Assembly (NCBI RefSeq): GCF_036588685.1
Contig: NC_086373.1
Span: 10,044,001-10,108,000 of the forward strand
Source of the DNA: Mytilus trossulus
Taxonomy: Eukaryota
DNA: 64,000 nt
Reading direction: 5' to 3'
How positions within the stretch are numbered: the stretch's first letter is position 1; each line of letters opens with the position of its first letter. The position numbers and the translations under genes were made by a program. Of this stretch, positions 23,498-47,427 are shown piece by piece. The notes under the pieces were generated by a model. It worked only from the letters and a program-made list of their open reading frames with translations. It was not told the origin of the DNA and did no database searches.

Positions 23498-25530
23498 TTA
23501 TGTCTGTGGTTGATAAGTATGTTGCTGTTGCTGTTGTTGCTGTTGTTGAATAATTTGTTGTGACACAGGTATCTGTATACGTTTCTGCATTTCATTTTGA
23601 TGGCTCATATTAAGTGGAGCATTACCTGCATATGCTGATGACTGAATAGGAACCATAGTAGGGGGTCCCCCTTCTATCTGAGCTATAACACCACCTTGGG
23701 CAGTGGTCGGTAGATTCTCTAAAAATCTTAAAGTCTCCATGTATCCTAATAGTGTGGAAAATGTCTGAGATTGTTGTCTATTATCATTTGTCTGCACAAC
23801 GGTTGGTCGATTGGTCTGGTCACGGTTCACTTGGTATTCAGCCGGTATGACACCATTTGTTCTAATCATATCTAAATTAACATCTTTGTTTATAATTTGT
23901 TGTTGTGCCGGTTGCTGTTGGTTTGTTAGGTACATTGTGCCATGTGTTTGCACCTGATGTTGTCGGTACTCGTTAGTTTGGGCGTTTGGATCCATAGCTT
24001 GCTGTTGGTGACGTATGGCACCCCCACTGACATCTATGTATCTCTGATCTGTTAACTGCATCTGTGATCCAATAGAAGTTACCTGCATACTTTGCATTTG
24101 AGCAGGTATGTGTTGCTGTTGATGTATGTTCTGCATGTTTGACATATTAATCACTGACTGAGCATTATTTTCATACAATTGAATAGGAACAGCTAATTCA
24201 CGTCCATCAGCTGTTTGCATGGTATGATAAATGCTATTAATGTTTGGTTGTGATGTGACCAGCACTGTTGGGTCTTCCCTGGGAATATTAAGAGCTTGAA
24301 ACACTGCAGCACTAACTTTTTCATACTCCTTCAGTTTTTCCTTCCTCTCCCCTCTAGGTGCTCTAGGAGGTTTATTAGCATTGTCTCCACTATGAGATGA
24401 TCTCAAATGACGAGTCAGGTGATCCTTACGTCCAAATCTCTGTGGACAGTATTGACATAGAAAGTCTTTTTTCTTTGTATGTGTAATCATGTGTCTTCTC
24501 ACATCTTTCCTTGTATAAAACTTCTTTCCACATTCAGGGCAAGCATGTATTTTTTCTGTACAATTTTTCACTGACCGGGCACCACTATGTACTTTCAAAT
24601 GATACAATAGTTCTTCCCTTGTCTCATGCTGCTTGTGACAGATTCCACACTCTGTAGACCTTCCTGCATCAGCATCGTGAAATGCCTTGTGAGTTCTGTA
24701 GGAAAAGTTGTAAGAATACTCCTTGCCACACTCTTCACACACCCATCTTTTCTTATTTGGGTCGTGAGTAATCATGTGATTTTTCAGGTGATCTTTACGA
24801 TTGAATGACTTGTCACAATAAGGACACTTGTGATGACGGGGACATGTATGAATCAAGCGATGTCTTTCTAATTTAAATTTGGACATAAATCCTTTAGAAC
24901 ATTCAGCTACTTCGCAAATAAATGGTTTGACTCCAGTATGGTCAGACACATGTATTACAAACAATGCTTCTTTTGTAAATGTTTCTGTGCAATGGGGACA
25001 TTGCATTGGTTCCCGTCTAGATGCCCTTGGTCCACGGGGAATCCTTCCTTTTTTACGACCACGTCTTCGTGGCATAGGTTCAGGATAATCTTCATCTGCT
25101 CCCAATATTTCATCTAACATTTCTGTAGTTGTCTTTTCCTCGTCTTCATCATCGTCCATGACTTGTTCCATGTATGCTTTATCTTCTGGTTCCCCATCTA
25201 GAGCCTGATCATCAGGCGTCTCCTCCACTTGTAGGGGTGGAGGAATGTCTAAGGCTGGTCGTTTATTCTTGGGTGGTCTCCCTCTCCGTCTTGGTGGAAG
25301 AGGCTGAGACTGTGAAGGGTCTACAACCTTAGCTTTTAACATTCTTGACTTCTCCAGTCTAGCTCTCCATGTTTTTGATGGTTTGATGTACTTTCTTGGC
25401 CTTCCTTTCCTGGGTCTACCTCTCAATCTACGACTGTCGGGTGGTAGTCCTGGACACAAGTGGGCTTCTAGATCAGCAAAAGCACTGAAGCCATCATAGC
25501 ACACTGAACACACCCACTTGGCAGCCACAC
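23498..25530 (-). CDS. PLAG1-like: PR-PLAG exon 6: C2HC finger, AT-hooks, 7 PLAG-type C2H2 fingers, Q-rich tail
   Basis: SKFKLERH, RKDHLKNHMITHDPNK, FYTRKDVRRHM, KDFLCQYCPQRFGRKDHLTRH are near-identical to vertebrate PLAG1/PLAGL2 fingers as recalled; RGRP motifs; ttacag| acceptor phase 1. Confidence 0.95.
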
Positions 25531-26147
25531 CTGTAATGAAAAATATTATTCCCTTAATAAAGACAACAAATTTTATAACAGTATTTGAATCTTATACATT
25601 TTAAAGAATGGTAGTTCACTTTTGCCTAACTTAACAACTGTGGTCTATTTCTAAAATGTAAGTTTAATAAGCCTTCCATAAGCAGCAAGTGGAGTTGATC
25701 TATTTTTAAGAATGTCTCTCAAGGTTCTTCATTTTAACTTTTATGCATATATATGGTAAATTTTGATAAACCTGACTTAGCACATGCAATTCTTAGTTGC
25801 TTTTTGAAAGTGACTTTTGATGCCATGACCTCAGAATCAATAGAAAGTTTCATCATTATATGTGACCACACGTTCAAGTAAACTTAAACTGTTAAAATTC
25901 CATCGTAGTATTAGATTTTGCACCTAGAAACAAATTGTCATTTCAGTCTGTTTAAATTACTAAGACCTTGACATTGAAAAAGTGACCTCAAAATCTTTCA
26001 GTGATTCTGCTGGCACTGGTCATTTACAAAAGGTTTCTAAAATGACGAAACTATTTCAAATCAATTTTGTCACTTAAATATGGAAAGACTTTCCCTTGAA
26101 AATACTATTATTTAGAGATTAATATTAAGCCACTATACCATGTTTAC

Positions 26148-26271
26148 CTGTAGCTTCCTGATCAGGTGTCTCTGTGATGATAGGTTCTGGATCAGACAGA
26201 AGTGGTTTGTCCATCGTCTCGGCATACTCAGCAGAATACCAAACTTTTATCTCAGTGTTAGAAGGAATTGG
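26148..26271 (-). CDS. PLAG1-like: PR-PLAG exon 5: PR/SET C-terminal motif
   Basis: PIPSNTEIKVWYSAEYAETMDK (ELxVWY motif); catag| and |gtaaac; 124 nt, phase 0-1. Confidence 0.92.
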
Positions 26272-26983
26272 CTATGTCAAAGAAAAAATAAATATGTATT
26301 ACTTAAAATACTGAAATTTTATTTTACCTACCACTTTTTTGTATCAAAGAGAAGTTCCAAAAGTTCCAATATAAATCATACTACCTGTGTCCTGGAACAT
26401 CATGACATGTTGCTTTTTTCAAAATTTTAATTTGTTTTACACCTGTGTATTGAAAAGATACCAGTACGATATGAATGTTTGAGGTGAAATGCAACGACAC
26501 AAAATTAACTTACAATTAGGCACACTTATATATCAACTTCGTCAATAAATCAATCTTATATTAACTTTGTCACACTATAATTACACAAATTTAATGTAGT
26601 CACATTTTAACTACACCACAATTAAATTAAGTTATTAAGTTACTTTATATATATATTGATTCCTGTATGTCAGACTAATAAAACAAATGGGTGATTTCCA
26701 TTAAAAGCTTTTCTACCAGTGCAATATATAACAACCCTCTGTTTCAGGATGCATGTAATCTTGATGTAATATCTGTGAATGGTGGCTGAAGTTTTGTTTT
26801 GTTTTACTTGATAAAGATTTTACCACTGCATCCAATAAAGAAGAGTTGCTGGAGTTTTTGGTGTGCACAGTACAGAATCAGAACTCTCAGAGTGTACTGT
26901 AAGCTCACATAGTCCTTCAGGGACACATGAACTAAAAAATATGTTAACATATGAATTCAGTAACAATTATTGCATGTACAAAC

Positions 26984-27136
26984 CTTTATAGATACAAAGA
27001 AAATATGCTCGTCTTGTTGATAAACAACAACATTTTGTTCAGCTGTATTTCTGGCAGGTCTAACAAACATCATCCAGTTACATTTATCTTCATCTGAGAT
27101 ATCAATATTATCAACATAGCCATCATCCTTAAATAT
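26984..27136 (-). CDS. PLAG1-like: PR-PLAG exon 4: PR/SET core
   Basis: IFKDDG...DISDEDKCNWMMFVRPARNTAEQNVVVYQQDEHIFFVSIK, the PRDM NWMxxV...EQN signature; 153 nt, phase 0-0. Confidence 0.95.
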
Positions 27137-27781
27137 CTGTAATTCAAAAGAGATATCAAATACACGTATTATCAACATAGCCATAATCCTTTAGGTGTAA
27201 TACCACCAAATCATGGTACATGTACGTCACATCAGTTGTATTTATGAAAATTGGTCGAAAAAAAATATTCCCTTGAATTTGACAGTTGTACATTGTAGGT
27301 AATTAATCCTACATTTTATTGCAGTAAAATATTTCTGTGTCATAAACATATGTCTTGGGTATTTCAAAGCACCATTAGTTTTTTATTTGGGGTTTCTATA
27401 GAAAAATTTGTAATCTCGAGTTACATGGTTCCTACTCTTGTACACAGGTCAAATAAGGGGGAGAAATTTGATTGGTTACCTTCCAGTGATGGTTATTTTC
27501 TTATATGCAATGAAATGTTATGTGAATTTTTTTCTATACAGTAGTCCTGGACAGGATAAAACTTTACTCATGCCAAGTATTTCTTTAATCATTTAATAAT
27601 TTGAAACAAAAATAAATTCTGCACACTTTTTTGAAAAGTGCAAAGTTAACAAAGACTAATATGGTGGTATTACAAAAAATGAACACTTTATAAAATATGT
27701 GCATCTGAAGCGGTTTTCATGCACACATTTTTAGTGTTAAATTCGTCAGGAAGGCTCAAACGTAAACATTTCAAAGCTTAA

Positions 27782-28560
27782 GGATGTATTCTTCTGACTT
27801 TTCCGTCTCGTTCAGTCTCGTTGAAATCTCGTTCTTGAATTATTTCCAAAACGTGTGATACAAGTGGAAAATATCAATGAATTTTAAAAATATTATTATC
27901 AAACATAACTCTGTGAAAAAATTATGTATTTACAATGAATGGTTTTTGAGTAATCCAGTTTTCATATTTTACGACCAATCAAGTCTGTATTTTTAGCCAA
28001 AATTTTGAGAAAATGGGTGAGGGATACAAAAAATGATTTTACAGGAATCATGTACATCCCATATCATTTTGGTCTTTTCAAATTTGTTAGATATGTATTT
28101 TTTCAATCATTTATAACAAAAAAGTTGAAATAATATGCATTTTGATCTTAAAACTGAGAAAAATCACAAAAATATAAAATTGACAGCATGGTAAAATTCA
28201 CACAAAAAAGCATCAAAATATGATAAAACTTTCTTATATTAACACCTACCTATAGTTTTTTTAAGTAAAATTTATTCAGATTGGTCCACTTCATCTTTGT
28301 AGAAAGTATGAAAAAAAGTTTAATTGTGGAACTGTGATTTTTTTCAGGATAATAGGCCAAAAATAGGTAAAAATCAATGAAAAAGGGGGAAATCATCAAA
28401 ATTGGGCATTTTCATAGGGCTGTAGCAAAAAAAAGAAGTGCACCACCATATGATTTTTTCTTCACCAATTATTTTGTTACAGTCTTATAAACCCAAAAAT
28501 CAGGTTAAGAAAAAAAGTTTAATTCTAGAAAAATTTTTGGCTCCTCAGAGGTGTACATCC
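27782..28560. mobile_element. Kolobok-like non-autonomous element
   Basis: TTAA at 27778-27781 and 28561-28564; TIRs ggatgta..ctga / tcag..tacatcc with GG...CC termini. Confidence 0.78.
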
Positions 28561-28943
28561 TTAAGATACATGAATGTAAATATGCTACAAGGTTAGAAGC
28601 TATACATGTATGACCAACAAGAATTCAAGTGCTCAACTTGTTGTTTCAAACAAAACATCACTTCAAGTTCAATTTAGGCTGTAATTGATCATGAGTGGTA
28701 GCGGTTTGCTGCACAGTTTAACATATTTGTTTCTCTTTCATAATAATAAATTATGTTATAAATTTTGTTCCTAAGTTAATTTATATGACCACTATCTTAG
28801 GTCTAACATGAATTTGAAGTGGTATTTAAGCACCATTGTTTCAACAACTTGAACCTGTTGACAAAATGATGATTCGTATATGTTAATGCAGAAAAATGTA
28901 TTAAAACTTAACCTCAATCTCGTAAGTTAATCTAGTTCTTTAC

Positions 28944-29977
28944 CTTAATCTCGTATGTATAATCTAGTTCTTTTTCTTCTGTTTCTTTTTCCTTTTCATC
29001 TGTCTGTTTTGTAACTTCTGTGGCAAGTGGCTCATCAATGGCATTAGTTTGTGGCCGCTGTTCTGATTCACTAGTTAGTACTGTGGGTAAAGGTTCAGTT
29101 GAGGCAAGAACAGTGTTTTGTTGTAATGACTCAGTAGTATTATGTTGCATGTGATCAGTTGAAGGTAGAGTAGTATTCTCCAGTGAAGAGAGCGACATAC
29201 TACTTGGTGGTAAAGGTTGCTGATCAGAAGTCATATTCTGAAGTTCCTGTGTGGCTACAGCTATCTGGTGCTCTAAGAGCTGTGTTTCTGTTAATCCTTC
29301 ATTGACGTAACTATCAGCTGGTGTTATTCCAGCCTCTATTGAAGCTTGCAATGTTAAGTCTTGTGACAATTGTGGCTGTTCAAACTGACTGGCAGCTGTA
29401 TCTCCAGACAATGTTGTCACTATATCTAACGCCTGCTGTGGAGTATAGCCACCAGATAGATGTTGAAGTCCCGCATCACCGTAAGGACCAGCATGTAAAC
29501 AGTTCTGGATATTCATTATCTGTGTAGCCTTGTCAATGTTAGGATGTTGAAGTGTAAAAGTATTGTTGTTTTGTTGTGAATATTGCTGAGATACTAACTG
29601 TTGTTGTATATTAGCAGTATCAAACCCATCAATGTTTTGTAACAATAAATGTCCATCGTCATTGTGTGGGATCATTTCAGAACTGTTAATATGTTGTTGT
29701 TGTTGCTGGGTTTCAATGCTTAATTGTCTTTGAATGTCAGCTTCTTGCTGCTGAGAATTTTGAGGAATATTTTGTGGAATTTGGTTAGTTATTTCTGGCT
29801 CAATAAGTTGAACACTGGGTGCTCCTTCCTCAATGGTTTCCTTTGGTGGTTTTTCATCTCCCCTTACATCTGTAGTCTCTTTCTTTGGAGTATGTTTTTC
29901 TGTAGATTTAACTTGTCCATAGAGAGGTCCAAACTGGGATCTGCATTGTATTATTCTTTTAGCAAAGATACCATAAG
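28944..29977 (-). CDS. PLAG1-like: PR-PLAG exon 3: PR/SET N-half plus long Q/T/E-rich insert
   Basis: SYGIFAKRIIQCRSQFGPLYG (SET-N motif) then ~320 aa low-complexity sequence to YEIK|gtaaag; 1034 nt, phase 1-0. Confidence 0.88.
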
Positions 29978-30087
29978 CTGTAAAACAAAAGTATTGAAAT
30001 GCAAAATAAATCAAAACAAAAGTTCATCAATATGTATCAATGCAGTCAAATCTATGTATGAACTTTTCTGTTTACCAGATGTTCCAC

Positions 30088-30322
30088 GTATTAGCAACAC
30101 AAACCACATACAATTTACAGAACTACTTTCAGACAGTAACCTGTAGCTGCTAGTGTCTTTTCATTGTATTAGCAACACAAACCACAAACAATTTACAGAA
30201 CTACTTTCGGACAGTCACCTGTAGCTGCTAGTGTCTTTTCATTGTATTAGCAACACAAACCAAAAACAATTTACAGAACTACTTTCAGACAGTCACTTGT
30301 AACTGCTGGTGTCTGTTCATTG
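30088..30322. repeat. 78-bp minisatellite, 3 copies
   Basis: gtattagcaacac recurs at 30088, 30166 and 30244. Confidence 0.95.
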
Positions 30323-30544
30323 TTTAGTCTCTGGTTTGACAGCTCTTTTCTCATTGGCAATCCTACCACAACATTAAATTTTATAAAGATGACAAATTTA
30401 TTTTCTGTCGGTTCCTACTGCACACCTCCAGTGAAATCCTTAAATACAAAACAGAATTTTCACTGAATTGTGTTATTAATTTAACAGTTACGATGGTTAC
30501 TTTTTAAAGTACCTTTTCATGCACAATAACAATGATATACTCAC

Positions 30545-30697
30545 ATGTTTTACCATCTTCCGTCTTCACCTGCTTAATAACAAGACCAGCTGGGCATGTA
30601 AGTCTTGCCCTTGATGGTATGGCATTATCAAAAACTTGTGTAAAACCACCATGTTTCTTACATATACCTGGTACACTCTTCCCACAGTCATGGCACC
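30545..30697 (-). CDS. PLAG1-like: PR-PLAG exon 2: PR zinc knuckle
   Basis: (W)CHDCGKSVPGICKKHG...DNAIPSRARLTCP matches the PRDM4/10/15 knuckle pattern WCxxC-x6-CxxHG...SRAR; ag/gt boundaries, 153 nt, phase 1-1. Confidence 0.9.
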
Positions 30698-31470
30698 CTA
30701 TTAAAAAAAGGAAATAAGTATAAACATCTTCTCTTTACCTTGTCTCATTGTAACTGTTTTAGTCCTTAAATATATACATTGTGTAATGCATGGATATCTT
30801 AATGAATAGAGAAATTTTCAGATTGATCATATACATGTACTACTCACACTACTAGTCATATACTAGACTATTGTTTTTTTTTTTTTTTTTATTGTCTTTT
30901 CAATGTCTTAGATTGTACTATTTTCCATGTGATAAAACATCTTCTTCCAAAGGTGTATTACTATAGTCATGATAGTGTAATGTTTAGATAAGTATTTTTT
31001 TTAATCATGATTTTTTTTTCATTTTTTTTGTCATACTCTGTGTCTCAGTGTACAAGATAGAATACCTGAATAAAGATCTATATCAGAAGATTAAACAACA
31101 CCTATACATGTATACTATTGTGCCTAGTTTCTCAAAAAAAAATTGAAAATTGATGGCTTTTTACATGATGACTTTATGTTTCAGGTATGTTTCAGGTCTC
31201 ATACATGTAATACTAATCATGCTAATAGCAGCACATTGCTTGCAATTGTAATCTTCATGGTTCAGCTCTCATTTCTAAATTATTTATTTTGCTGAAATGT
31301 CTAGATCTATTGCATTCCATTCAAGGCCTAAATATGTCTTAATCATAGTCAACCCATTTAAAGATTTTGAAGCACTTATTTCTTGTAATGATCACCAACT
31401 TGTGGGAGGGTTGTATCATGATAAAAATATTTTTTTTTTAGGGTTGGTCTATTTTTTTATTTAAATATAT

Positions 31471-31684
31471 GAGGCTCCCACAGGGTACCCCCCTCAGGTC
31501 GCAAGGTCGCTTTTAAATTTGTCGAGAGGTCGTTTTTAAGGGAAATGTACAGGTCGGAGGTCATTTTTCTCAACACAGAGGACGTAAGTCGTTCGGAGGT
31601 CGTTTTTAGAAGGCCCTCAGGTCGGAAGTCGCCTCTCAAAAGCCCAGCTAGGTCGCAGGTCGTTTTTGACCTTGCGGGAGCCTC
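31471..31684. mobile_element. Sola-like MITE
   Basis: TIRs gaggctcccacagggt / accttgcgggagcctc; ATAT on both flanks; internal AGGTCG repeats. Confidence 0.75.
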
Positions 31685-31725
31685 ATATATTCTACTTTCT
31701 TCAGTCCTTTTTTTGTTTTACTTAC

Positions 31726-31753
31726 ACAACTCATCTTGTTTGTGGGATGACAT
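31726..31753 (-). CDS. PLAG1-like: PR/SET-domain PLAG-family zinc-finger protein, coding exon 1 of 6
   Basis: gccATG TCA...MSSHKQDEL-T|gtaagt; phase 1 T joins GG of the next exon to give the conserved W of W-C-x-x-C; polypyrimidine acceptor at ~31783. Confidence 0.75.
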
Positions 31754-32204
31754 GGCTGCTTAGCCAATCCTATTTGTAGACACTAAAATGGAGAAGAAAA
31801 ATGATATTTAAAGACATATTATTTATAAGGAAAGCCAACACAATGTGCTTGTTAAAATGTTAATATACCTGTGTATGCATGTACAACTACAATTTGATCA
31901 TATGAATAAATATATATACATGTATATAACCTACTGTTTAATATTTACTGTAAGTAGAAAAACTGATCATGTAATCATGTTAATTGTCAAATTAAAATAA
32001 TAAAGCAATAAAATTCACTTTTGCAACTACTGCTTGTTTATTCTTACTTCACTTGATATTTAAAATCAAAGACTAGCAACAATTTAATGTTAATTCTTCT
32101 GAGACAAGCCATGTACATGTATAAATATAAAGTATATTTTTCTTAATCATGTTAATAATACATGTACAACAATGTATGTACAAATGTATATCTTATCTTA
32201 ACCA

Positions 32205-32805
32205 TTGTTAACCAAGGAGCCTGTTTTGTTATTTATTCCATGCGTTTCAGTTTTAGGATAAGTTTTTGATGGTCCACTTTATCAAACGCTTTTGAAAACT
32301 CCATAACAACTACGTCAGTTTGTTTACTGTTTGCCATATAAACATGGTAAATGTTCGAAGTTGTGTTTCACAGCTACATGTAACTTTTGATCTAAAACCA
32401 TGCTGCAGTGGGTATAGTAAATCGTGAATGTCTAGATGTTTCATTATGGATGATACAATTATATATGTTCTAGTGATTTACTTAGAATACAGGTTAGAGA
32501 GATGGGCCTGTAGTTTTTAGGTTTAGATTTTGCTCCCTTTTGAAAACTGGTGTAACCAAGTCCTTTCTCCAGTCCTTTGGTACGGTGCCTGTATTTACTG
32601 ATGAATTAAACAAGTCAGATATTATAGGTGAGATTTTATGATGAACTTCTTTTTAAAAATGAGGCGATATTTTGTCTGGACCAATTGCTTTTGATGGGTT
32701 TAAATTATTTAGTAATTTAAATGTTCCTTCTGGGGTGATGTTTATTTGCTTCATTTCAAATTTATGTGTTGCTGATTTTAATGATTTTAGTTCATGTGAA
32801 AATCA
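32205..32805 (-). mobile_element. Decayed CR1-type LINE RT fragment
   Basis: LNPSKAIGPDKI, VPKDW, NYRPISLTC, QHGFR, FSKAFDKVDH with stops and frameshifts. Confidence 0.85.
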
Positions 32806-33810
32806 GTGGGGAAAAAAATGAAAAGTGTTTTAACATGAACTTCTTTCATTTTATATATGTATGAATTATATCACAAGGAAAATTAAGCATTACTTTTTTT
32901 GGAATTTATTTAGTGAAAAAAATTCTTCCAAATACTGCCCACATCCTTAACATGAGTATTTTGGCAAATATTTTAATTTAAGCATGATTAAAAACAATTT
33001 GTTTATTTGATTTAGTTTGTACATGCTGTATGGCAGTTCTAATTCATGAAAAAATAATTAAATATTCCCTACATGTATTCCAATACCCCCATTTCTACCC
33101 TCTTAAAAAGTTATTGAAACTATTTAACTTTTATTTTCATAATTTTGAATAAATGCATTATACATGCATTACAAATAATATGCATTATAAATCTTTTTTT
33201 TTCTTTTTATAAATATGCTTTCTTTGTCATGGTCAGTTGCATTCATTGGTTTTATGTAATCTTGATCAATCATTTAAACTTTTATTTAAAAGTTATCCAT
33301 TTACATTTAATGTGTGTTCCCTTTAAATAATCATGATTATTAGGGGCCATAAGACCACACAACATATTGATTCATATGTTCTAATGACCAATATGCTGAC
33401 AAAGCTCAATTTCAAGATAGAAAATTCCATAACAGCTTTAGAGTGAAATATACAAAACACGACAAACGTTTATCCAATGATTATGGTAAATAATTTGTTG
33501 TTAATTCAAAGTATTTTATTCAAAATAATTTAGAAACCTTGAATCCACTCTCGAGCAACACAGTCGGTGGAGGTACCAGGGAGGGGTCAACCATTCAGAG
33601 GCATTTTCGGGTGCACGGGTTATTAGTTTCATTATTATCGGTTTCTTCAAAGCTGTTAAGCATCAAGGAACCAAAGGACAGACTTTTTAATATGATTCTT
33701 ACCCTTATTAACCAAAGCTTTGACGTTCTATTTTTGATTTGTAGACAAAGAAGGGTTTTGTCCCAATGATGGCCATTATCGCATTGCATTATGGGATCGC
33801 CAACTCAAGC

Positions 33811-33840
33811 TTACGTCAGTATTCCAAGATGGCAGCGCCC
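33811..33840. promoter_or_regulatory. Candidate bidirectional core promoter of CHCHD7 and PR-PLAG
   Basis: CRE/ATF-like TTACGTCA (33811-33818) and YY1-like CAAGATGGCAGC (33825-33836) just upstream of the CHCHD7 ATG, in a locally GC-richer patch between divergent genes. Confidence 0.5.
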
Positions 33841-33897
33841 ATGTAGAATGTAAACAAACAACCGAATGAAGGACATTTACATAAGCTAACTAAAAAT

Positions 33898-34080
33898 ATG
33901 CCAGAAACTTCCTCAGATGATTTGGACCAAAAACATAAGAGTGCGAGTGAGATAGTTGAAGAACGACGAAAAAAAACAATCGAAGAAAAGAGGAAAAGGG
34001 TGAATGAGATTGTAGAAGAAAATAGAAAGAGAGTGGTCAAAGAAAAATTGGAAGCTGTACTAAGACATCCATGCAATCGT
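33898..34080 (+). CDS. CHCHD7: CHCHD7/COX23 homolog, exon 1 of 3
   Basis: MPETSS...LRHPCNR|gtaaga; 61 codons, phase 0; supplies the first Cys of the twin CX9C motif. Confidence 0.88.
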
Positions 34081-34530: not shown

Positions 34531-34612
34531 CTAGTCTAAATAATTATGACGTCTGAAGGCGTCCCAATAAAAATTTAAAATAGCCTTACCAGACGCCATA
34601 ATTATTTGGACT
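34531..34612. mobile_element. Short palindromic MITE-like element
   Basis: tagtctaaataattatgacgtctg ... cagacgccataattatttggacta. Confidence 0.65.
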
Positions 34613-37791: not shown

Positions 37792-37847
37792 TATGTATAA
37801 TATTGAAATGTCCAATTAAATATGAATATTCTAATTTTTCGTTTTAG

Positions 37848-37946
37848 GAAAAAGAAATGTCATATCAGTGTTTAGAAGATAATGGTTATGATAGAGGTAG
37901 ATGTCAAATGTATTTTGAAAATTACAGAAACTGTTCCAAGTTTTGG
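37848..37946 (+). CDS. CHCHD7: CHCHD7/COX23 homolog, exon 2
   Basis: ttttag|EKEMSYQCLEDNGYDRGRCQMYFENYRNCSKFW; completes CX9C-X10-CX9C; resembles human CHCHD7 CLDENNYDRERC..YF..YKNCRRFW as recalled; donor is gcaagt. Confidence 0.92.
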
Positions 37947-38436
37947 GCAAGTATTTTAATCAAAACAGTTTTGTTTAAGTTAATTATGCAATTTTATTTT
38001 GAATTACATGTGTATTAAATATTTAACTTATTCAGTCATTATATACATCATTGTACATGTATGTAAAGTTGATTTTTTATCAAGCATCACCAAATTCTAA
38101 CATGTTGAATTGTTTTCAAGAATGATTGCGCTTCATTACTTATATGAAATGAGGAGATGTGGTATGATTGCAAAAGACACAACAACATGTATCCACTAAA
38201 GTCCAAATGATGTGGATTTACACATCTATAGGTCATCATACAGCGATACAGCTTTTAACAGTAACCAAAAGCCATATTGTAAAGTCAACAATAAACGGTT
38301 CTGATATTTGTTTGAACTATCACTTAAGATTTATTGATCTTGAAAAACTATATATCATCAGCTACATTAACAAGGAACATTGGTCAATTACTCCCCTTTA
38401 ATGATGACACATTTGAGAAGAAATGAGGTTAAGTTG

Positions 38437-39540
38437 CAGGCCTCTACAATAACTTTTTTTTAACTTGTCCAGTAGGACAAGTACATACCAAAACTTGCTT
38501 GTCCGAATGAAATTGATACTTGTCCAAATTTTTATTATTAAAAATGACCTTTTTGCACCTTAAGTTGATTAAAGGAACAAAACGAATTAAAACAATAGAA
38601 CAGAATTTGAAATATTTTTCAAAAATATGAGTCAAGTGACTGAATCAAGTCATATCACAGGACTAAGGTTCTAGTTTTCATCAATGCCAGTCTCATCAGA
38701 CTCTGCACATGAGGCACCATCTGATAGGCCTGTTCACTCATTGGATTTGTATCCTGTTTATTTTGAAGTTGAAAAAACTTTATTCAAATGCAATTGATAA
38801 AAAGAAGAAGATAAGGTCCGATTGCCAATGAGACAACTCTCTGCAAGAGACCAGATGACACAGAAATTTACAACTTTAGGTCACCATATTGCAAGTATTG
38901 TTTTTTTCTACTTATGATCAAATATGATTTTGTGAATTTAATGGTAAATAAAAAAAAATATTTTTGTGAAAAAATTACCGGTATGGTATATATTATAATG
39001 AACAGAATAAGGTAGCAAAATGAGTTACTGATTTGTCTTGGTCCCGACATGTCTCCTGCCTTGCCAAACTGTCTATCAATCATGTCTACTAAGTATGTCT
39101 CCTACAGTGCCAAACTGCCTATTCAACTTTGAGCTAAACCTGTCCAGGTGAGGAACTGTCCTGTAAAGTAACCTTATCTACAAAGCGCATCATTGATTCC
39201 CGATCAGTAAGACTGGTTTCTGAGAATACTATACCTTTTACCTTTTAAAAAGTACCTGACAAAGAACCAGTTAAAAATTATCAATTGCAAGTACAGATGT
39301 TGAAGAAAAAGGTTTTGCATTTGAATACTAGTAAACAGAATACAAAAACATGTCAAATTAATATTTGTTTTCTTGTTTTTTGTTTATAATAACTTTGTTC
39401 ATCAAAGTTGGATTAAATATGTTTTCTGCAGAATAATTGTACTTGTCCGGACGGACAAGTTTGATACAGCTTTTTCTTGTCCGACCTTTTTTTTCCCCTC
39501 TGGTACCGGACAATCGGACAAGCGTTATTGTCGAGGCCTG
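38437..39540. mobile_element. Non-autonomous TIR element (hAT-like CAG termini)
   Basis: caggcctctacaataac / gttattgtcgaggcctg; subterminal ttgtcc/ggacaa repeats; flanks share only agttg. Confidence 0.72.
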
Positions 39541-39649
39541 AGTTGTGTATTTAAAATGTTTGGTTGATAATAAATCTATTGAAGTTGTTCTGTCTTGCTT
39601 CTCTGTCAGCATTAACATAATACTGTTTCTAGACATGATGATTTTCATT

Positions 39650-42600
39650 CCAATGAGGAGAAGTTGTTTCTACATCTCCCTCAAATCCCAGCCAAAATTT
39701 GCATTACTGTGAGATGTTGTTTTACACATCACTCACAGTTCCCAACCAAAATGATTTCAATTACTGTGAGAAGGGGTTCTTTCAATATCTCCTCCAGTTA
39801 CAAGCCAATATTACTTTTATTATTGTGAGTGAATGTTAATTCCACATTGATTTACTACTGTGAGTAGAGGTTGTCTTAACATCTCCAACTGTTCCTGGAC
39901 AAATGATTTCCCTTCATGTGAGTATTGTTTGCCACTGTTCCCAACTATGATAACGTTCACTACTGTGCGTAGATTCTTTTCTCATCTGCCACTGTTCCCA
40001 GCCAAAATGCTTTCCTTTTCTGATTATCGAGTTTGTTTTCACATCTGCCACAGTTCGCAGCCATAATGCTTTCTGTAACTTAGGGTAGAGGTTGATCGAT
40101 TTCACTGTTCCTAGTAATAGTGATTTCAATTACTCTAAGTAGAGGTTGTTTTCAGTTACTGTGAGTAGAGGTTGGTTTCCCGTCTGCCACTGTTCCCAGC
40201 CAGAATGCTTTCTTTTCTTGTGAGAAGAGTTTGTTTTCCCATCCGCCACTGTAACTAGTAAAGATGATTTCAGTTACTGTGAGTAGAGGTTGCTTCCAGT
40301 TATTGAGATTTGAGGTGGTTTCATCATCTGCCACTGTTCCCAGCCAAAATGCTTTCTTTTCTTGTGAGAAGAGTTTGTTTTCACATCTGCCACAGTTCGC
40401 AGCCATAATGCTTTCTGTAACTTAGAGTAGAGGTTGATCGATTTCACTGTTCCTAGTAATAGTGATTTCAATTACTCTAAGTAGAAGTTGTTTTCAGTTA
40501 CTGTGAGTAGAGGTTGGTTTCCTGTCTGCCACTGTTCCCAGCCAGAATGCTTTCTTTTCTTGTGAGAAGAGTTTGTTTTCCCATCTGCCACTGTTACTAG
40601 TAAAGATGATTTCAGTTACTGTGAGTAGAGGTTGCTTCCAGTTATTGAGAGTTGAGGTGGTTTCATCATCTGCCACTGTTCCCAGCCAAAATGCTTTCTT
40701 TTCTTGTGAGAAGAGTTTGTTTTCCCATCTGCCACCTGTTAGTAGTAAAGATGATTTCAGTTACTGTGAGTAGAGATTGCTTCCAGTTATTGGGAGTATT
40801 CCACACATCCTTCGTATTCTAGCCAAGATGATTTCAATAACTATGACCAGAGGTTGTTTCCACACATCCTACGTATTCTAGCCAAGATTTTTTCCATAAC
40901 TATGACCAGAGGTTGTTTCCACACATCCTACTGTACATGTACGTATTGCAACCAAGATGATTTTCATTACTATGACCAGAGGTTGTTTCTACACATCCTA
41001 CGTATTCTAGCCAAGATGATTTCCATTACTATAACCAGAGGTTGTTTCCACACATCCTACGTATTCTAGCCAAGATAATTTCCACTACTATGACCAGAGG
41101 TTGTTTCCACACATCCTACGTATTGCAACCAAGATGATTTCCATTACTATGACCAGAGGTTGTTTCTACACATCCTACGTATTCTAGCCAAGAGGATTTC
41201 CATTACTATAATCAGAGGTTGTTTTCACACATCCTACGTATTCTAGCCAAGATAATTTCCACTACTATGACCAGAGGTTGTTTCCACACATCCTACGTAT
41301 TCTAGCCAAGATAATTTCCATAACTATGACCAGAGGTTGTTTCTACACATCCTACGTATTCTAGCCAAGATGATTTCCATAACTATGACCAGAGATTGTT
41401 TCCACGCATCCTACGTATTACATGACTCCATAACTATGACCAGAGGTTGTTTCTACACATCCTATGTATTATAGTCAAGATGATTTCCACTACTATGACC
41501 AGAGGTTGTTTCCACACATCCTACGTATTCTTGCCAAGATAATTTCCATTACTATGACCAGAGGTTGTTTCTACACATTCTACGTATCCTAGCCAAGCTG
41601 ATTCACATTACTATGACCAGAGGTTGTTTCCACACATCCTACGTATTAAAGCCAAGATGATTTCCATAACTATGACCAGAGATTGTTTCCACTCATCCTA
41701 CGTATTACATGACACCATACCTATGACCAGAGGTTGTTTCTACACATCCTATGTATTATAGCCAAGATGATTTCCACTACTATGACCAGAGGTTGTTTCC
41801 ACACATCCTACGTATTCTTGCCAAGATAATTTCCATTACTATGACCAGAGGTTGTTTCTACACATCCTACGTATCCTAGCCAAGCTGATTCACATTACTA
41901 TGACCAGAGGTTGTTTCCACACATCCTACGTAGTATAGCCAAGATGATTTCCATAACTATGACCAGAGATTGTTTCCACTCATCCTACGTATTACATGAC
42001 TCCATAACTATGACCAGAGGTTGTTTCTACACATCCTATGTATTCTAGCCAAGATGATTTCCACTACTATGACCAGAGGTTGTTTCCACACATCCTACGT
42101 ATTCTTGCCAAGATGATTTCCATTACTATGACCAGAGGTTGTTTCTACACATCCTACGTATCCTAGCCAAGCTGATTCACATTACTATGACCAGATATTG
42201 TTTCTACACATCCTACGTATTCTAGCCAAGATGATTTCCATAACTATGGCCAGAGGTTGTTTCTACACATCTTACGTATTTTTGCCAAGATGAATTCCAT
42301 TACTATGATCAGAGGTTGTTTCCACACATTCTACGTATTCTAGCCAATATGATTTCTATAACTATGACCAGAAGTTGTTTCTACACATCCTACGTATTCT
42401 AGCCAAGATGATTTCCATAACTATGACCAGAGGTTGTTTCTACACATCCTACGTATTCTAGCCAAGATGATATCCATAACTATGACCAGAGGTTGTTTCC
42501 ACACATCCCATGTATTCTAGCCAAGATGATTTCCATAACTATGACCAGAAGTTGTTTCTACACATCCTACGTATTCTAGCCAAGATGATATCCATAACTA

Positions 42601-45030
42601 TGACCAGAGGTTGTTTCCACACATCCTACGTATTCTAGCCAAGATGATTGATTCTACACATCCTACGTATTCTAGCTAAGATGATTGATTCTACACATCC
42701 TACGTATTCTAGCCAAGATGATTGATTCTACACATCCTACGTATTCTAGCCAAGATGATGTCCATTACTATGACCAGAGGTTGTTTCCACACATCCTACG
42801 TATTCTAGCCAAGATGATTTCCATAACTTTGACCAGAAGTTGTTTCCACACATCCTACGTATTCTAGCCAAGATGATGTCCATTACTTTGACCAGAGGTT
42901 GTTTCCACACATCCTACGTATTCTAGCCAAGATGATTGATTCTACACATCCTACGTATTCTAGCTAAGATGATTGATTCTACACATCCTACGTATTCTAG
43001 CCAAGATGATTGATTCTACACATCCTACGTATTCTAGCCAAGATGATGTCCATTACTATGACCAGAGGTTGTTTCCACACATCCTACGTATTCTAGCCAA
43101 GATGATTTCCATAACTTTGACCAGAAGTTGTTTCCACACATCCTACGTATTCTAGCCAAGATGATGTCCATTACTTTGACCAGAGGTTGTTTCCACACAT
43201 CCTACGTATTCTAGCCAAGATGATTGATTCTACACATCCTACGTATTCTAGCTAAGATGATGTCCATTACTATGACCAGAGGTTGTTTCCACACATCCTA
43301 CGTACTCTAGCCAAGATGATTTCCATAACTATGACCAGAAGTTGTTTCTACACATCCTACGTATTCTAGCCAAGATGATATCCATAACTATGACCAGAGG
43401 TTGTTTCCACACATCCTACGTATTCTAGCCAAGATGATTGATTCTACACATCCTACGTATTCTAGCTAAGATGATTGATTCTACACATCCTACGTATTCT
43501 AGCCAAGATGATTGATTCTACACATCCTACGTATTCTAGCCAAGATGATGTCCATTACTATGACCAGAGGTTGTTTCCACACATCCTACGTATTCTAGCC
43601 GAGATGATGTCCATTACTATGACCAGAGGTTGTTTCCACACATCCTACGTATTCTAGCCAAGATGATGTCCATTACTATGACCAGTGGTTGTTTCCACAC
43701 ATCCTACGTATTCTAGCCAAGATGATTTCCATAACTTTGACCAGAAGTTGTTTCCACACATCCTACGTATTCTAGCCAAGATGATTTCCATAACTTTGAC
43801 CAGAAGTTGTTTCCACACATCCTACGTATTCTAGCCAAGATGATGTCCATTACTTTGTCCAGAGGTTGTTTCCACACATCCTACGTATTCTAGCCAAGAT
43901 GATTGATTCTACACATCCTACGTATTCTAGCCAAGACGATGTCCATTACTATGACCAGAGGTTGTTTCCACACATCCTACGTACTCTAGCCAAGATGATG
44001 TCCATTACTATGACCCGAGGTTGTTTTCACACATCCTACGTATTCTAGCCAAGATGATTTCCATAACTTTGACTAGAAGTTGTTTCCAAACATTCTACGT
44101 ATTCAATCTAAAATTCTTTCCATTACCTGAACCAGAGGTTTTTTTCTCACCTCCAACATAGAGTGAATAATTAGTTGTAAGGTAATTTCACTATCCTCAC
44201 ATTTTCCCATCCAATATTATTGTAACCAGAAGTTGTTTCTACATTTCGCACTGATGGCCATTATGCCAAGTCAGAATGATTACCATTACTGAAAAGTAAA
44301 TCAATGGAAGTTGTTTCGCCATTTCCAACGATCCCCGTCCAAAATTATTTATATTGCTGTGATCACAGTTTGTTACCACACCCCATCTTACCAGCAAAGG
44401 CGAATTAGTATGAAAAAGAGGTTGTTGCCACACCTCTCACTGTTTCCAGACAAGTTTTAATATGAACAGACGTTTCTTCCACATTTCCCACTGTTCCTAG
44501 CAAAGATGATATCTATTACTGTGACCAGAGATTGTTTCCACATCTTCCACTGCCTAAAGCCAATGTGATGTCTATTACTGTGCAATTGTTGTTTCTACAT
44601 TTCCCTCTAGTCCCAGTTAAAATGATCCCCAATACTGTATTGGAAATAGTTTCGTCATTTACACCTATTACCGTACAAAATCATTTCTATTGTAACCAGA
44701 GGTTGTTTCAACCAGAGGCGGATTTAGGGGGGGGGGGGGCCGGGCCCCCCCCCCCTTTTTGGGAAAAAAATTGGTTGCTTATATAGGGAATCACTGAAGT
44801 GGGCCCCCTCTTATGTCAGTCAGTGGGCCCCCACTTATGAAAATTCCTGGATCCGCCACTGGTTTCAACACACCTTCTTCACCGCCAATGTAATTTATGT
44901 TACATGGATCAGAAGATGATTTCATATATCCCACTGTTGCAATCCAAATTGATATATTTATTAATGTGGGCGGCGGTTGCTTCCACGTCGTCCTACAGTG
45001 TCAAGCCGAAATGTGACCAGAAGTTGTATT
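39650..45030. repeat. 59-bp satellite array in CHCHD7 intron 2; homogeneous core ~40800-44110, diverged flanks
   Basis: Monomer ttccacacatcctacgtattctagccaagatgatttccattactatgaccagaggttgt, with 51-bp and 37-bp deletion variants. Confidence 0.95.
44713..44861. mobile_element. hAT-type MITE with 8-bp TSD
   Basis: cagaggcggat / atccgccactg TIRs; GTTTCAAC at 44705-44712 and 44862-44869. Confidence 0.9.
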
Positions 45031-45136
45031 TACATATTCCTGAAAACATTAGACATTTTCTAAATTTGATTAAATGCCTGTAAGATTCAGTCATTGTGAA
45101 TAACGACTATTTTTCTAGGCATTTTATAAAACAGAC

Positions 45137-45316
45137 TGAACTCAGTGATTAATCTGCACATTACAGGTGATGCATCTATAACTGGAGTTTACTTGTTGAA
45201 CTCAGTGATTAATCTGCACATTACAGGTGATGCATCTATAACTGGAGTTTACTTGTTGAACTCAGTGATTAATCTGCACATTACAGGTGATGCATCTATA
45301 ACTGGAGTTTACTTGT
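45137..45316. repeat. Perfect 60-bp tandem repeat, 3 copies
   Basis: Identical tgaactcagtgatt...gtttacttgt units. Confidence 0.97.
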
Positions 45317-47313
45317 GGCAGTGTATTTAAAGATACTCATACTCGGCATCACAATTAAATCGGCTTTGTTTCGCAAAACCCATGCTTAAGATGGGCAAGC
45401 GGTAGTCGTAATCCCTGTCCTTTATCCAGAATAATATATTGCAGCAAATATCCATATGCATAATAACCAAATCATTCTCATCTTCAAAATGAATGAAATA
45501 CTTGCTACTGACAGGAACAATAAGTAATTTTATAACCAAACCTCTTTTCTCTGTTCCACATGTTTCATGACACTGTTTTGAATCTGGAATTTTTAAACAA
45601 CCATTTGGTAAGATTGTTCTATTGAAAGAACAATTTGTCCTTCTATTTTTTTGAAAAAATAAATAAAATTTACTATCTGAAATACAGAGTGAATACATAC
45701 TTAACATAGATTCAAAAAACATACCACATCATATGACATACGAACCTTCCCAGCTGGTTTTTGGAAAATCAATTAATTCCACCGAACCAGTAGTTATTTT
45801 CTTTGCAAGATACATTTTGTGTTTTTTCCAGTTATGTCAAGTAAGTCTCAATGATTTTATTTTTCTACAAATTGCCTGAAACTGAAAGGCAATTTATGGA
45901 ATATTGTTTAAAAGTTTTATTCATTTTACAAAATGACTAGGTAGTTTTAGTCATTTTTTATAATGCCTTTCAAGGTATGGCATTTTATAAATTGCCTGAA
46001 AATTGAGTTATTTTAGAAAATGCCTAAAACATATATATACAAGTAGAAATACATAGATTTAACAAAAATACCGAACTTCAAGAAAAATTCCAAACGGAAA
46101 AGTAAAAAAACATCAGACGAATGGATAACAACGGTCATTTCCTGAAATATAAACATTGAGTGGACAGGACGGATACTTGCACATCCAAACTAAAAAATGA
46201 CTTAGTACAGATATGATCATGATGATGGTTACTGAAAGCCAATAAAAACTTAAAATAAAATCATGCATTTAAAACTAAATTTTCCACTTCTCCCAGTTCT
46301 CCCTGCCAAACTGATTTCTGTTACTGTGACCAGTTGTCTTTTTCATATCTCCCACTGTTGCTCATAAAGGTGGTTAATATTACTGGGATAAGATGACGGT
46401 ACACAACTGCCATTATTCCAAAGCAAGGGGGTTTCCATTTGATTATTATCTTCTAAACCACTGACATACAAGTTCTAACGAAACTTTACCTGCAACTCTT
46501 GCAATTGTTGGCTGGGTGTCAGTGAGACTATTAGAGATTCTTGTACAGAAAAGCATACAGTACCTGATCGTCAAAGTAACCGTGAGACTAAGGCGTATGG
46601 TGAGTCAACAGCGTTGAAGTTGTCATTTCAGAAGTTTTAAAAAGAATCACCAATGACAGCTCAATGATATTTGGTAAACAGTACATGTATAAAAACTATA
46701 AGAATAGGCAAATTTCATTAGAGTTTATGTGGTCCTGTTCCTCAGTCATACAATGGGCTTTAAAACTTTTCCGTAGTTTACGTGTTAATGTGTAATTGGG
46801 TTAAAAATTGGGATAAACAGTTGTATTAACACATCACTACTCGTATAAATTGAGATTATATAACCCCTATCACATGATGGCAAGGTTGTCAAAAACCCGG
46901 GTTTCATGAGTATTGCCCAGTCCAGTGGGAAATACTGGGAAAACCCGGGTTTTACTGTGTTTTAATTGGTAATACTAGGCAATACTGAGTAATATATAAT
47001 ACTGGCCTGAATTTTATAGAGAATTCAGTGTCAGATCAAACTCAAATGCAATACATTTAAGATATTTATAAACTCATTTTGATTTATAAACAAGTTTACT
47101 TGTTTGAGAGTCTGATAATACAACTTACAAGTGTATACATTTGAAAAAGTACTATTCTAGCAACTATGAGACAACTAGAGATGTTTGAAGCGTAGTTTGT
47201 TTTCTCATAATCGATTTGACTTTGAACACCGGTAGACTAGTACTGTTGCCTACATTTATAGTATGATCAAGTAAATGAGATTTTAATGATATATTTTCAA
47301 TTTACCTTTACAG

Positions 47314-47427
47314 AATAGTGTAAGCTGGGAAAGATTGTTCAGAGGCATTAAACCTTCAATTCCTCCTCCGGATGAAAGAGATGCTATTAGAGAAGAATTT
47401 GCAAAAAGAAAAGGCTATAATTACTGA
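47314..47427 (+). CDS. CHCHD7: CHCHD7/COX23 homolog, exon 3; total 131 aa
   Basis: ctttacag|NSVSWERLFRGIKPSIPPPDERDAIREEFAKRKGYNY*; matches the CHCHD7 tail pattern NS...R..G.KP..P...ERD.I. Confidence 0.9.
   Translation, partial: NSVSWERLFRGIKPSIPPPDERDAIREEFAKRKGYNY

What the first reader, a model, noticed from the sequence alone, without database searches (positions are those of the whole stretch)
23498..47427. PLAG and CHCHD7 are head-to-head in a mollusc, as in mammals
Seen: a PLAG-type seven-finger gene on the minus strand (ATG 31753) and a three-exon twin-CX9C gene on the plus strand (ATG 33898) point away from each other, 2.1 kb apart. Known: vertebrate PLAG1 and CHCHD7 are divergent neighbours sharing a bidirectional promoter, a locus involved in promoter-swap fusions in pleomorphic adenoma and in stature QTL in cattle. 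Inference: the pair predates the protostome-deuterostome split and is held together by shared regulation linking a growth regulator to a cytochrome c oxidase assembly factor. It is also a natural growth candidate locus for shellfish.
Basis: partly seen in the sequence, partly recalled or inferred. Interest (0 to 1): 0.92.

Follow-up and report, generated by a model that had tools for sequence, protein, structure and literature searches.

The report
Ancient PLAG–CHCHD7 head-to-head gene pair
In this mussel a PLAG-family transcription factor gene, which here also carries a PR domain, and the mitochondrial gene CHCHD7 start only about 25 bases apart and point away from each other, the layout known in mammals; a distantly related bivalve has it too, so the pairing is probably very old, though other phyla could not be checked.

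Summary
The window is Mytilus trossulus chromosome DNA.

- **Minus-strand gene (23498-33799+):** it has seven exons and encodes a 1174-aa protein. The protein has a zinc knuckle, a PR domain, AT hooks and seven PLAG-type C2H2 fingers, so it is not a plain PLAG.
- **Plus-strand gene (33825-47427):** a three-exon CHCHD7/COX23 orthologue.
- **Orthology:** reciprocal searches and a tree support orthology on both sides.
- **Distance between the genes:** spliced RNA-derived contigs from four runs reveal a non-coding first exon of the PLAG gene at 33703 to at least 33799. CHCHD7 contigs begin at 33825-33838.
- **Second species:** a metagenome contig from a heterodont bivalve shows the same head-to-head pair. 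It shares a promoter block with a Staf/ZNF143-like site.
- **Mammals:** papers report head-to-head genes 420-500 bp apart.

Chance adjacency is negligible, so common ancestry is the parsimonious reading. The claim that a functional growth–respiration link holds the pair together is not supported; abutting promoters are the simpler constraint. The scan had already noted the PR–PLAG fusion on this same stretch. I file this as a new member of a known kind, the ancient microsyntenic pair.

The parts
23498..25534 (-). Last exon of the PR-PLAG gene: an extra C2HC-like finger, AT hooks, seven PLAG-type C2H2 fingers, a Q-rich tail and the stop codon (23498-23500)
   Evidence: 100% identical to P0001 residues 497-1174. 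Pfam zf-C2H2 E 1.3e-24. Invariant Cys/His of seven fingers. It is the best hit in this genome for skate PLAG1, 1.8e-65 against 4.5e-32 for the next.
26146..26298 (-). Small coding exon of PR-PLAG (P0001 residues about 449-498)
   Evidence: tblastn of P0001
26969..27166 (-). Exon with the C-terminal half of the PR domain
   Evidence: PF21549 E 5.2e-18; PRDM10 3IHX E 4.5e-12 and PRDM4 3DB5 E 3e-10
28941..29981 (-). Exon with the N-terminal half of the PR domain followed by a long Q/T/E-rich insert
   Evidence: tblastn of P0001 residues 60-406; weak PF21549 match at residues 14-50; contigs of four runs cover 28944-29977 and splice to 30545
30543..30697 (-). Zinc-knuckle exon (WCHDCGK...IPSRARLT), conserved in PR-PLAG proteins of other phyla
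   Evidence: tblastn; consensus of alignment A1; spliced joints 29977/30545 and 30696/31725 in four runs; frame check
31726..31782 (-). Second exon of PR-PLAG; holds the ATG at 31753 (MSSHKQDEL)
   Evidence: Matches the N-terminus of P0001; joints 30696/31725 and 31782/33703 with CT..AC ends in four runs
33703..33799 (-). Non-coding first exon of PR-PLAG (minimum extent; GTAAGA donor at 33702)
   Evidence: Joint 31782/33703 in all four runs. Contig lengths and bin depths place the contig ends at 33772-33799. Donor checked.
33756..33834 (.). Shared core promoter. A block at 33756-33797 is conserved with the heterodont contig and includes an 18-bp Staf/ZNF143-site-like sequence at 33780-33797 (minus strand). 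A CRE-like TTACGTCA lies at 33811-33818, in the gap between the two mapped 5' ends. A YY1-like AAGATGGC lies at 33827-33834.
   Evidence: Local alignment score 30 against shuffles 20.1 +/- 2.4 (max 31 of 500) and real-sequence controls max 28 of 46. Single copy in the genome. The SBS definition (CCCR at positions 3-6, C at position 12) comes from PMC3082894. Factor assignments are inference.
33825..34080 (+). CHCHD7 exon 1: 5' UTR from about 33825, ATG at 33898, ends HPCNR with the first Cys of the first CX9C; GTAAGA donor
   Evidence: Contigs start at 33825, 33828 and 33838 and run on into exon 2 sequence in four runs; P0122 maps here
37848..37946 (+). CHCHD7 exon 2: completes the first CX9C and holds the whole second CX9C; GC donor (GCAAGT)
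   Evidence: Human CHCHD7 structure 2LQT E 5.2e-8, next COX17 at 0.095. Pfam CHCH, COX6B and CMC4 matches below cut-off. CHCHD7 family HMM E 9e-17.
47314..47427 (+). CHCHD7 exon 3: conserved tail (GIKPSIPPPDERD) and stop codon
   Evidence: tblastn of P0122 at 94.6%; family HMM E 3e-8; brittle-star CHCHD7 matches it

Best explanation
This is an ancient divergent gene pair. A PLAG-family transcription factor gene, in its PR-domain-bearing form, and the CHCHD7/COX23 gene are transcribed away from one compact bidirectional promoter at about 33.8 kb.

Shown:
- Both genes are single-copy orthologues of their vertebrate counterparts.
- Their mapped transcript 5' ends are about 25 bp apart.
- The same head-to-head pair, with a conserved promoter block, exists in a heterodont bivalve.

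Inferred:
- Mammals have PLAG1 and CHCHD7 head-to-head 420-500 bp apart, so the arrangement descends from the bilaterian ancestor. After the vertebrate genome duplications it was kept next to PLAG1.
- The most likely reason for its persistence is structural. The two core promoters abut or overlap, so any breakpoint between the genes would disable at least one of them, and CHCHD7 is a single-copy housekeeping mitochondrial gene.
- The promoter looks like a housekeeping bidirectional type, with Staf/ZNF143-like, CRE-like and YY1-like sites. The developmental control of the PLAG gene probably comes from elsewhere.
For: - Species and model: P0001 is 100% identical and carries PF21549 plus zinc-finger families.
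- Exons.
- Splicing: minus-strand introns 29977/30545, 30696/31725 and 31782/33703 appear in contigs of four runs from four studies. PR-PLAG contigs end at 33772-33799. CHCHD7 contigs start at 33825-33838 and continue into exon 2.
- CHCHD7 identity: 2LQT E 6.7e-17 over 65 collinear residues, against COX17 at 0.064. 300 family members were found, and named ones are CHCHD7 in gastropods, a brittle star and a wasp. It is the only copy in the genome.
- PLAG identity: skate PLAG1 has its best genome hit here, 230 bits against 120 for the next. In the tree the bivalve clade plus Lingula is sister to a deuterostome clade holding amphioxus, shark PR-PLAG, PLAG1 and PLAGL2.
- Second bivalve: L007 has PR-PLAG on the plus strand at 6552-12827 and CHCHD7 on the minus strand at 4662-3240. 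Its protein groups with Mactra, apart from the Mytilus clade.
- Promoter: the shared block is reported and is single copy.
- Mammals: PMC9405559 (500 bp), PMC7552293 (420 bp), PMC5359603 (bidirectional promoter).
- Local order is otherwise scrambled: RPS20-like and TGS1-like matches lie on the same chromosome but about 90 Mb away.
Against: - Only two phyla are represented, and the vertebrate side rests on papers, not on data examined here.
- All other informative metagenome contigs were too short on the 5' side, so absence elsewhere is untested.
- Contigs cannot fix true transcription starts, and the runs are only guessed to be RNA. The spliced joints argue that they are.
- The promoter block score is modest: 1 or more of 500 shuffles reach it.
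- Factor binding is inferred from motif resemblance only.
- Nothing here tests whether constraint or slow neutral decay explains the retention.
Confidence: 0.75

Rival explanations
1. One reading: selection keeps the pair together because a growth-promoting transcription factor and a cytochrome c oxidase assembly factor must be expressed together from shared regulatory DNA.
For: The 5' ends abut and one conserved promoter block serves both genes. In fetal cattle tissues one promoter variant was associated with expression of both genes and of several neighbours (Karim et al. 2011, as summarised in PMC5359603). Conserved 5'-5' pairs are often co-expressed (PMC3514665).
Against: In cattle mammary tissue the top PLAG1 eQTL (P 1e-23) has no significant effect on CHCHD7 (P 0.065; PMC5359603). 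CHCHD7::PLAG1 promoter swapping activates PLAG1 in adenomas, so the two sides differ in activity in that tissue (PMC9405559). Here the contig depth ratio of PR-PLAG to CHCHD7 varies from about 0.26 to 0.02 among four runs, though depth is a poor measure. No known pathway links PLAG to COX assembly.
Confidence: 0.12
2. Neutral survival: the adjacency is ancestral but persists only because bivalve and vertebrate genomes rearrange slowly. No constraint acts on this pair.
For: Hundreds of ancient microsyntenic pairs are known, and some will survive by chance (PMC3514665). Two lineages are a small sample.
Against: Other genes close to PLAG1 in mammals (RPS20 per PMC5359603; TGS1 from my own knowledge) match the same mussel chromosome but about 90 Mb away, so local order has been thoroughly shuffled. 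The intergenic target for a harmless break is at most a few tens of bp, which itself amounts to a constraint. The promoter block is conserved between bivalve subclasses.
Confidence: 0.1
3. Convergence or mistaken orthology: the mollusc and vertebrate adjacencies arose independently, or one partner is not the true orthologue.
For: The mussel gene carries a PR domain closest to PRDM10. NCBI names some orthologues 'PRDM10-like', so its family assignment is not trivial.
Against: Both partners are reciprocal best hits with wide score gaps. Sharks and amphioxus have PR-bearing PLAG-family proteins inside the deuterostome PLAG clade. Two given genes among at least 20,000 become immediate divergent neighbours by chance with probability about 1e-4 or less (inference).
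Confidence: 0.03

Closest known systems
Mammalian PLAG1–CHCHD7 bidirectional locus (human 8q12, cattle BTA14 stature QTL)
   Same: Orthologous partners, divergent orientation and 5' ends within a bidirectional-promoter distance: human 500 bp, sheep 420 bp, and about 25 bp between mapped contig ends here.
   Different: The mussel PLAG-family gene keeps a zinc knuckle, a PR domain and AT hooks that mammalian PLAG1 lacks. No CCG-repeat or CpG-island type promoter is evident: GC is 0.38 and CpG observed/expected about 0.8. Regulatory behaviour in the mussel is unknown.
Conserved ancient microsyntenic pairs in 5'-5' orientation (Irimia et al. 2012, PMC3514665), for example HSPE1–HSPD1
   Same: An orthologous neighbouring pair kept across phyla in divergent orientation with a very short intergenic region.
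   Different: This pair is not named in that paper's main text, and its supplementary lists were not held. Here only molluscs and vertebrates are documented, whereas HSPE1–HSPD1 is documented from humans to unicellular relatives.
Staf/ZNF143-dependent bidirectional promoters (PMC3082894) and ZNF143 control of nuclear-encoded mitochondrial genes (PMC11687419)
   Same: An 18-bp sequence with CCCR at positions 3-6 and C at position 12 sits at the shared promoter. Its first 12 bases are identical in two bivalve subclasses. One partner encodes a mitochondrial protein.
   Different: Binding is untested. The motif definition is loose. The site lies inside the transcribed first exon of PR-PLAG as mapped by contigs.
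PRDM10/15 subfamily of PR-domain zinc-finger genes (PMC4760075)
   Same: The PR domain is closest to PRDM10, and an N-terminal zinc knuckle precedes it.
   Different: The finger array is PLAG-type, with seven fingers 51% identical to skate PLAG1, not the PRDM10/15 array. That paper does not mention PLAG.

Membership tests
CHCHD7 / COX23 (twin CX9C protein) | [quoted passage not shown] | tested here: met
   C-NREKEMSYQ-C spans exons 1 and 2, and C-QMYFENYRN-C lies in exon 2. The Pfam CHCH match on exon 2 alone is below cut-off.
CHCHD7 / COX23 (twin CX9C protein) | Closer to CHCHD7 than to COX17, COX19, CMC or other CHCH families | tested here: met
   Human CHCHD7 2LQT scores E 6.7e-17 over residues 13-77. 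The next CHCH protein, COX17, scores 0.064. For exon 2 alone the values are 5.2e-8 and 0.095. Named relatives are CHCHD7. No explicit tree with COX19 was built.
CHCHD7 / COX23 (twin CX9C protein) | Reciprocal best hit and single copy in the genome | tested here: met
   Brittle-star CHCHD7 (P0128) matches only exons 2 and 3 of this gene in the 1.3-Gb assembly.
CHCHD7 / COX23 (twin CX9C protein) | Location in the mitochondrial intermembrane space and a role in cytochrome c oxidase biogenesis | not testable with these tools
   Inferred from family membership only.
PLAG family (PLAG1, PLAGL1, PLAGL2) | Seven collinear C2H2 fingers of PLAG type | tested here: met
   All 28 Cys/His ligands are invariant or nearly invariant in a 14-protein alignment that includes skate PLAG1 and bichir PLAGL2. 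Identity to skate PLAG1 is 51% over residues 29-239.
PLAG family (PLAG1, PLAGL1, PLAGL2) | Orthology: reciprocal best hit and tree position | tested here: met
   The best vertebrate hits are PLAG1 or PLAGL2. Skate PLAG1 returns this exon at 230 bits against 120 for the next. The lophotrochozoan clade is sister to the deuterostome PLAG clade. No non-PLAG outgroup was included.
PLAG family (PLAG1, PLAGL1, PLAGL2) | Mammalian-type architecture: fingers plus a C-terminal activation region, with no PR domain | tested here: not met
   The mussel protein has a zinc knuckle and a PR domain upstream of the fingers. PR-bearing forms also occur in Lingula, insects, a crayfish, amphioxus and sharks. The gene is therefore best called a PR-bearing pro-orthologue of the family.
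Bidirectional promoter (starts under 1 kb apart on opposite strands; PMC3082894) | Divergent transcription with 5' ends within 1 kb | tested here: met
   PR-PLAG contigs reach 33799 and CHCHD7 contigs begin at 33825-33838. Strands are fixed by splice-site orientation and reading frames. Exact starts need CAGE.
Bidirectional promoter (starts under 1 kb apart on opposite strands; PMC3082894) | One DNA segment drives both directions | not testable with these tools
   Needs a dual-direction reporter assay.
Ancient bilaterian microsyntenic pair | The same orthologous adjacency in several phyla on both sides of the protostome–deuterostome split | tested here: inconclusive
   Found here in two bivalve subclasses and reported in mammals.

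The most novel reading that the evidence does not exclude
The PLAG–CHCHD7 unit is one of the oldest intact bidirectional promoters in animals. It would have been kept since the bilaterian ancestor with a recognisable core, a Staf/ZNF143-type site plus a CRE. It would also have anchored the 5' end of a PR-domain gene that later lost its PR domain to become vertebrate PLAG1. On this reading the mammalian stature and tumour locus has a directly comparable, experimentally tractable counterpart in invertebrates.
Probability: 0.4. Interest if true: 0.6.

Novelty: new member of a known kind. Interest (0 to 1): 0.5.

Why it matters
PLAG1–CHCHD7 is one of the best-known bidirectional loci in mammalian genetics. 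It is a major stature QTL in livestock and humans, and a promoter-swap hotspot in salivary gland adenoma.

Showing that the same two genes share a promoter in bivalves would date the arrangement to before the protostome–deuterostome split. It would explain why the pair has never separated, and it offers a simple comparative system for asking how a housekeeping promoter and a developmentally controlled gene coexist.

It also ties the pairing to the finding that the ancestral PLAG gene carried a PR domain. The practical claim about shellfish growth has no support yet.

Tried and rejected
- **Word-index search:** The search for homologous proteins with the CHCHD7 protein found only Mytilus sequences.
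- **Papers:** no paper pairs CHCHD7 with microsynteny. The supplements of the two microsynteny papers are not held.
- **Genome-contig scan** with the PLAG alignment found nothing.
- **Metagenome loci:** of 37, only L007 reached the 5' side. L010, L020, L026, L027, L035, L037 and L039 are uninformative, not negative.
- **L039:** a weak CHCHD7-like hit turned out to be a 360-aa ORF without the cysteines and was rejected.
- **L007 exon 1:** a first candidate at 4281 had no usable donor and was replaced by 4662-4603, which ends DPCFH followed by GTAAGA.
- **Macrosynteny** was mixed. RPS20-like and TGS1-like matches are on C1. ATP6V1H is on C11, TFIIS_M is ambiguous and ATG11 was not found. It is used only as a side remark.
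- **Vertebrate contigs:** L013, L015, L016 and L017 are vertebrate PLAG-family contigs that may be human. They were in blanket local tblastn runs before I recognised them. I then left them out and did nothing further with them.
- I joined the three CHCHD7 exons inside a local script to count identities against P0122.

Full report
**What is there**

The window is Mytilus trossulus DNA, G000 contig C1, 10,044,001-10,108,000. It contains no N.

The large minus-strand ORF at 23501-25528 is 100% identical to the C-terminal 676 residues of LOC134714823 isoform X2 (P0001, 1174 aa). Mapping P0001 back gives coding exons at 23501-25534, 26146-26298, 26969-27166, 28941-29981 and 30543-30701, plus a short first coding exon. 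The ATG at 31753 encodes MSSHKQDEL and matches the N-terminus of P0001.

The protein is more than a PLAG. It has a zinc knuckle and a PR domain: PF21549 at E 5e-18, with PRDM10 structure 3IHX as the closest solved relative at E 4.5e-12. It also has AT hooks and seven C2H2 fingers. The Cys/His ligands of the fingers are invariant or nearly invariant across 14 PLAG-family proteins from molluscs to fishes. The scan had already noted this fusion on the same stretch.

**The plus-strand gene**

It has three exons: 33898-34080, 37848-37946 (with a GC-AG intron) and 47314-47427.

- Exon 2 alone finds human CHCHD7 (2LQT) at E 5.2e-8, against 0.095 for COX17.
- The M. galloprovincialis protein named CHCHD7-like (P0122, 131 aa) matches the three exons at 89-95% by tblastn. 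It aligns to 2LQT over 65 collinear residues at E 6.7e-17, with the next CHCH family at 0.064.
- A full HMMER search gave 300 relatives. The named ones are CHCHD7 in sea slugs, a brittle star and a wasp.
- A brittle-star CHCHD7 matches nothing in the 1.3-Gb assembly except exons 2 and 3 of this gene.

In one search I also joined the three exons inside a local script to count identities with P0122 (127 of 131). The joined model was not sent to any tool.

**Orthology of the finger gene**

- The best vertebrate matches are PLAG1 and PLAGL2.
- Skate PLAG1 returns this exon as its best hit in the genome, 230 bits against 120 for the next.
- In a 40-protein tree the bivalve clade, with Lingula beside it, is sister to a deuterostome clade. 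That clade contains amphioxus, PR-bearing shark 'PLAG1-like' proteins, PLAG1 and PLAGL2.

The mussel gene is therefore a pro-orthologue of the whole PLAG family in a PR-bearing form. No non-PLAG outgroup was included in the tree.

**How close the two genes really are**

Contigs of four public runs from four studies were laid on 28300-34200. The runs are only guessed to be RNA, but all four show introns removed with minus-strand GT-AG ends: 29977/30545, 30696/31725 and 31782/33703.

The last joint reveals a non-coding first exon of PR-PLAG that starts its intron at 33702 (GTAAGA). From contig lengths and bin depths, the exon reaches 33772, 33781, 33792 and 33799 in the four runs. CHCHD7 contigs begin at 33825, 33828 and 33838 and continue into exon 2 sequence.

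Contigs cannot give exact starts, so the true ends may be closer still or may overlap. This meets the usual definition of a bidirectional promoter, with starts under 1 kb apart (PMC3082894).

**Is it only Mytilus?**

A scan of metagenome contigs with a PLAG-family alignment gave 37 loci. One of them, L007, is a 13.4-kb contig from a marine metagenome and holds the whole 5' side.

- PR-PLAG lies on the plus strand from 6552 to 12827.
- CHCHD7 lies on the minus strand upstream. Exon 1 is at 4662-4603 and ends DPCFH followed by GTAAGA. Exon 2 is at 4040-3939. Exon 3 is at about 3380-3240. The intron after the first Cys is in the same place as in Mytilus.
- The L007 protein groups with Mactra in a clade separate from the one holding Mytilus, oysters, scallop and ark shell. 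It comes from a heterodont bivalve.

From my own knowledge, those lineages separated roughly 500 million years ago.

The other long contigs were cut off on the 5' side and say nothing either way. Four contigs (L013, L015, L016, L017) are vertebrate PLAG-family DNA and may be human. I left them out once I recognised them.

**A conserved promoter core**

The regions just upstream of the two CHCHD7 ATGs share a block: Mytilus 33756-33797 and L007 4760-4712, in the same orientation. It contains exact 10-mer and 12-mer matches.

- The local alignment score is 30, against 20.1 +/- 2.4 for 500 shuffles (maximum 31) and a maximum of 28 for 46 real control segments.
- The Mytilus block is single copy in the genome.
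- On the minus strand, 33780-33797 reads as an 18-mer with CCCR at positions 3-6 and C at position 12. These are the defining features of the Staf/ZNF143 site given in PMC3082894. The first 12 bases are identical in L007.
- A CRE-like octamer follows in both species: 33811-33818 in Mytilus, and a perfect TGACGTCA in L007.

ZNF143 is reported to act at bidirectional promoters (PMC3082894) and on nuclear-encoded mitochondrial genes (PMC11687419). Binding here is inference only, and the statistical support is modest.

**Comparison with mammals, and what can be concluded**

Papers report CHCHD7 and PLAG1 head-to-head 500 bp apart in humans (PMC9405559), 420 bp apart in sheep (PMC7552293), and sharing a bidirectional promoter with causal stature variants in cattle (PMC5359603).

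Two given genes among tens of thousands become immediate divergent neighbours by chance at about 1e-4 or less (inference). Both partners are orthologous. Shared ancestry is therefore the parsimonious reading.

It is not demonstrated. No paper in the library links CHCHD7 with microsynteny.

As a side remark, RPS20-like and TGS1-like matches lie on the same mussel chromosome but about 90 Mb away. This suggests that local order around the pair has been shuffled. Other markers were mixed.

**Why the pair persists**

The available evidence points the other way.

- The strong cattle PLAG1 eQTL does not move CHCHD7 (PMC5359603).
- Placing PLAG1 under the CHCHD7 promoter activates it in tumours (PMC9405559).
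- The depth ratio of the two genes' contigs varies more than tenfold among the four runs here, though depth is a weak measure.

The simpler explanation is structural. With core promoters abutting, there is almost no place where a rearrangement could separate the genes without damaging one of them.

**Verdict**

The ancestral-pair inference is likely but only partly tested. The functional-coupling idea is unsupported. This is a new example of a known class, the ancient 5'-5' microsyntenic pair (PMC3514665), at a locus of medical and agricultural interest.

Noticed in passing
window 39978-44144 and 45137-45316: The 9.4-kb second intron of CHCHD7 is largely satellite DNA. There is a 59-bp unit in about 57 copies (40799-44144), 144/342-bp repeats at 39978-40798, and a perfect 60-bp triplet at 45137-45316.
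   Followed up: partly
window 37947-37952: CHCHD7 intron 2 uses a GC donor (GCAAGT) in place of GT. The junction is supported by the M. galloprovincialis protein model but was not covered by the laid contigs.
   Followed up: partly
P0039, P0105 (sharks), P0049 (amphioxus), P0029 (Lingula), P0093/P0095/P0104 (arthropods): PR-domain-bearing PLAG-family proteins occur in sharks alongside an ordinary PLAG1, and in amphioxus, a brachiopod, insects and a crayfish. The PR domain therefore looks ancestral to the family and lost in PLAG1 and PLAGL2. The PRDM family survey PMC4760075 does not mention PLAG.
   Followed up: partly
G000 C1 at 101.58 Mb and 97.89 Mb: Ribosomal_S10 (RPS20-like) and Methyltransf_15 (TGS1-like) matches lie on the same chromosome as the pair but about 90 Mb away. 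In mammals these genes sit close to PLAG1. This is a hint of conserved chromosome-scale linkage with scrambled local order.
   Followed up: partly
window 2968-3669 (-): An intact 233-aa ORF that looks like the C-terminal two thirds of a rhodopsin-type GPCR (NPLIYG motif).
   Followed up: no
window 59323-62211 (+) and 15891-17247 (+): A 962-aa LINE-type reverse transcriptase ORF, and fragments of another reverse transcriptase.
   Followed up: no
window 30861-31057, 31452-31648, 32240-32830: These intron and intergenic stretches are covered by many contigs at 90-95% likeness, with depth up to about 7000. They are most likely transcribed repeats from elsewhere in the genome, not part of either gene.
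   Followed up: no
L013, L015, L016, L017: Metagenome contigs carrying vertebrate PLAG1-, PLAGL2- and PLAGL1-like exons (up to 88% identical to coelacanth PLAG1). They may be host or human contamination, so I set them aside and did not analyse them further.
   Followed up: no
window 33560-33721: One contig of run X1 crosses the 33703 donor unspliced. It may be pre-mRNA, a longer first-exon variant or upstream antisense transcription.
   Followed up: no
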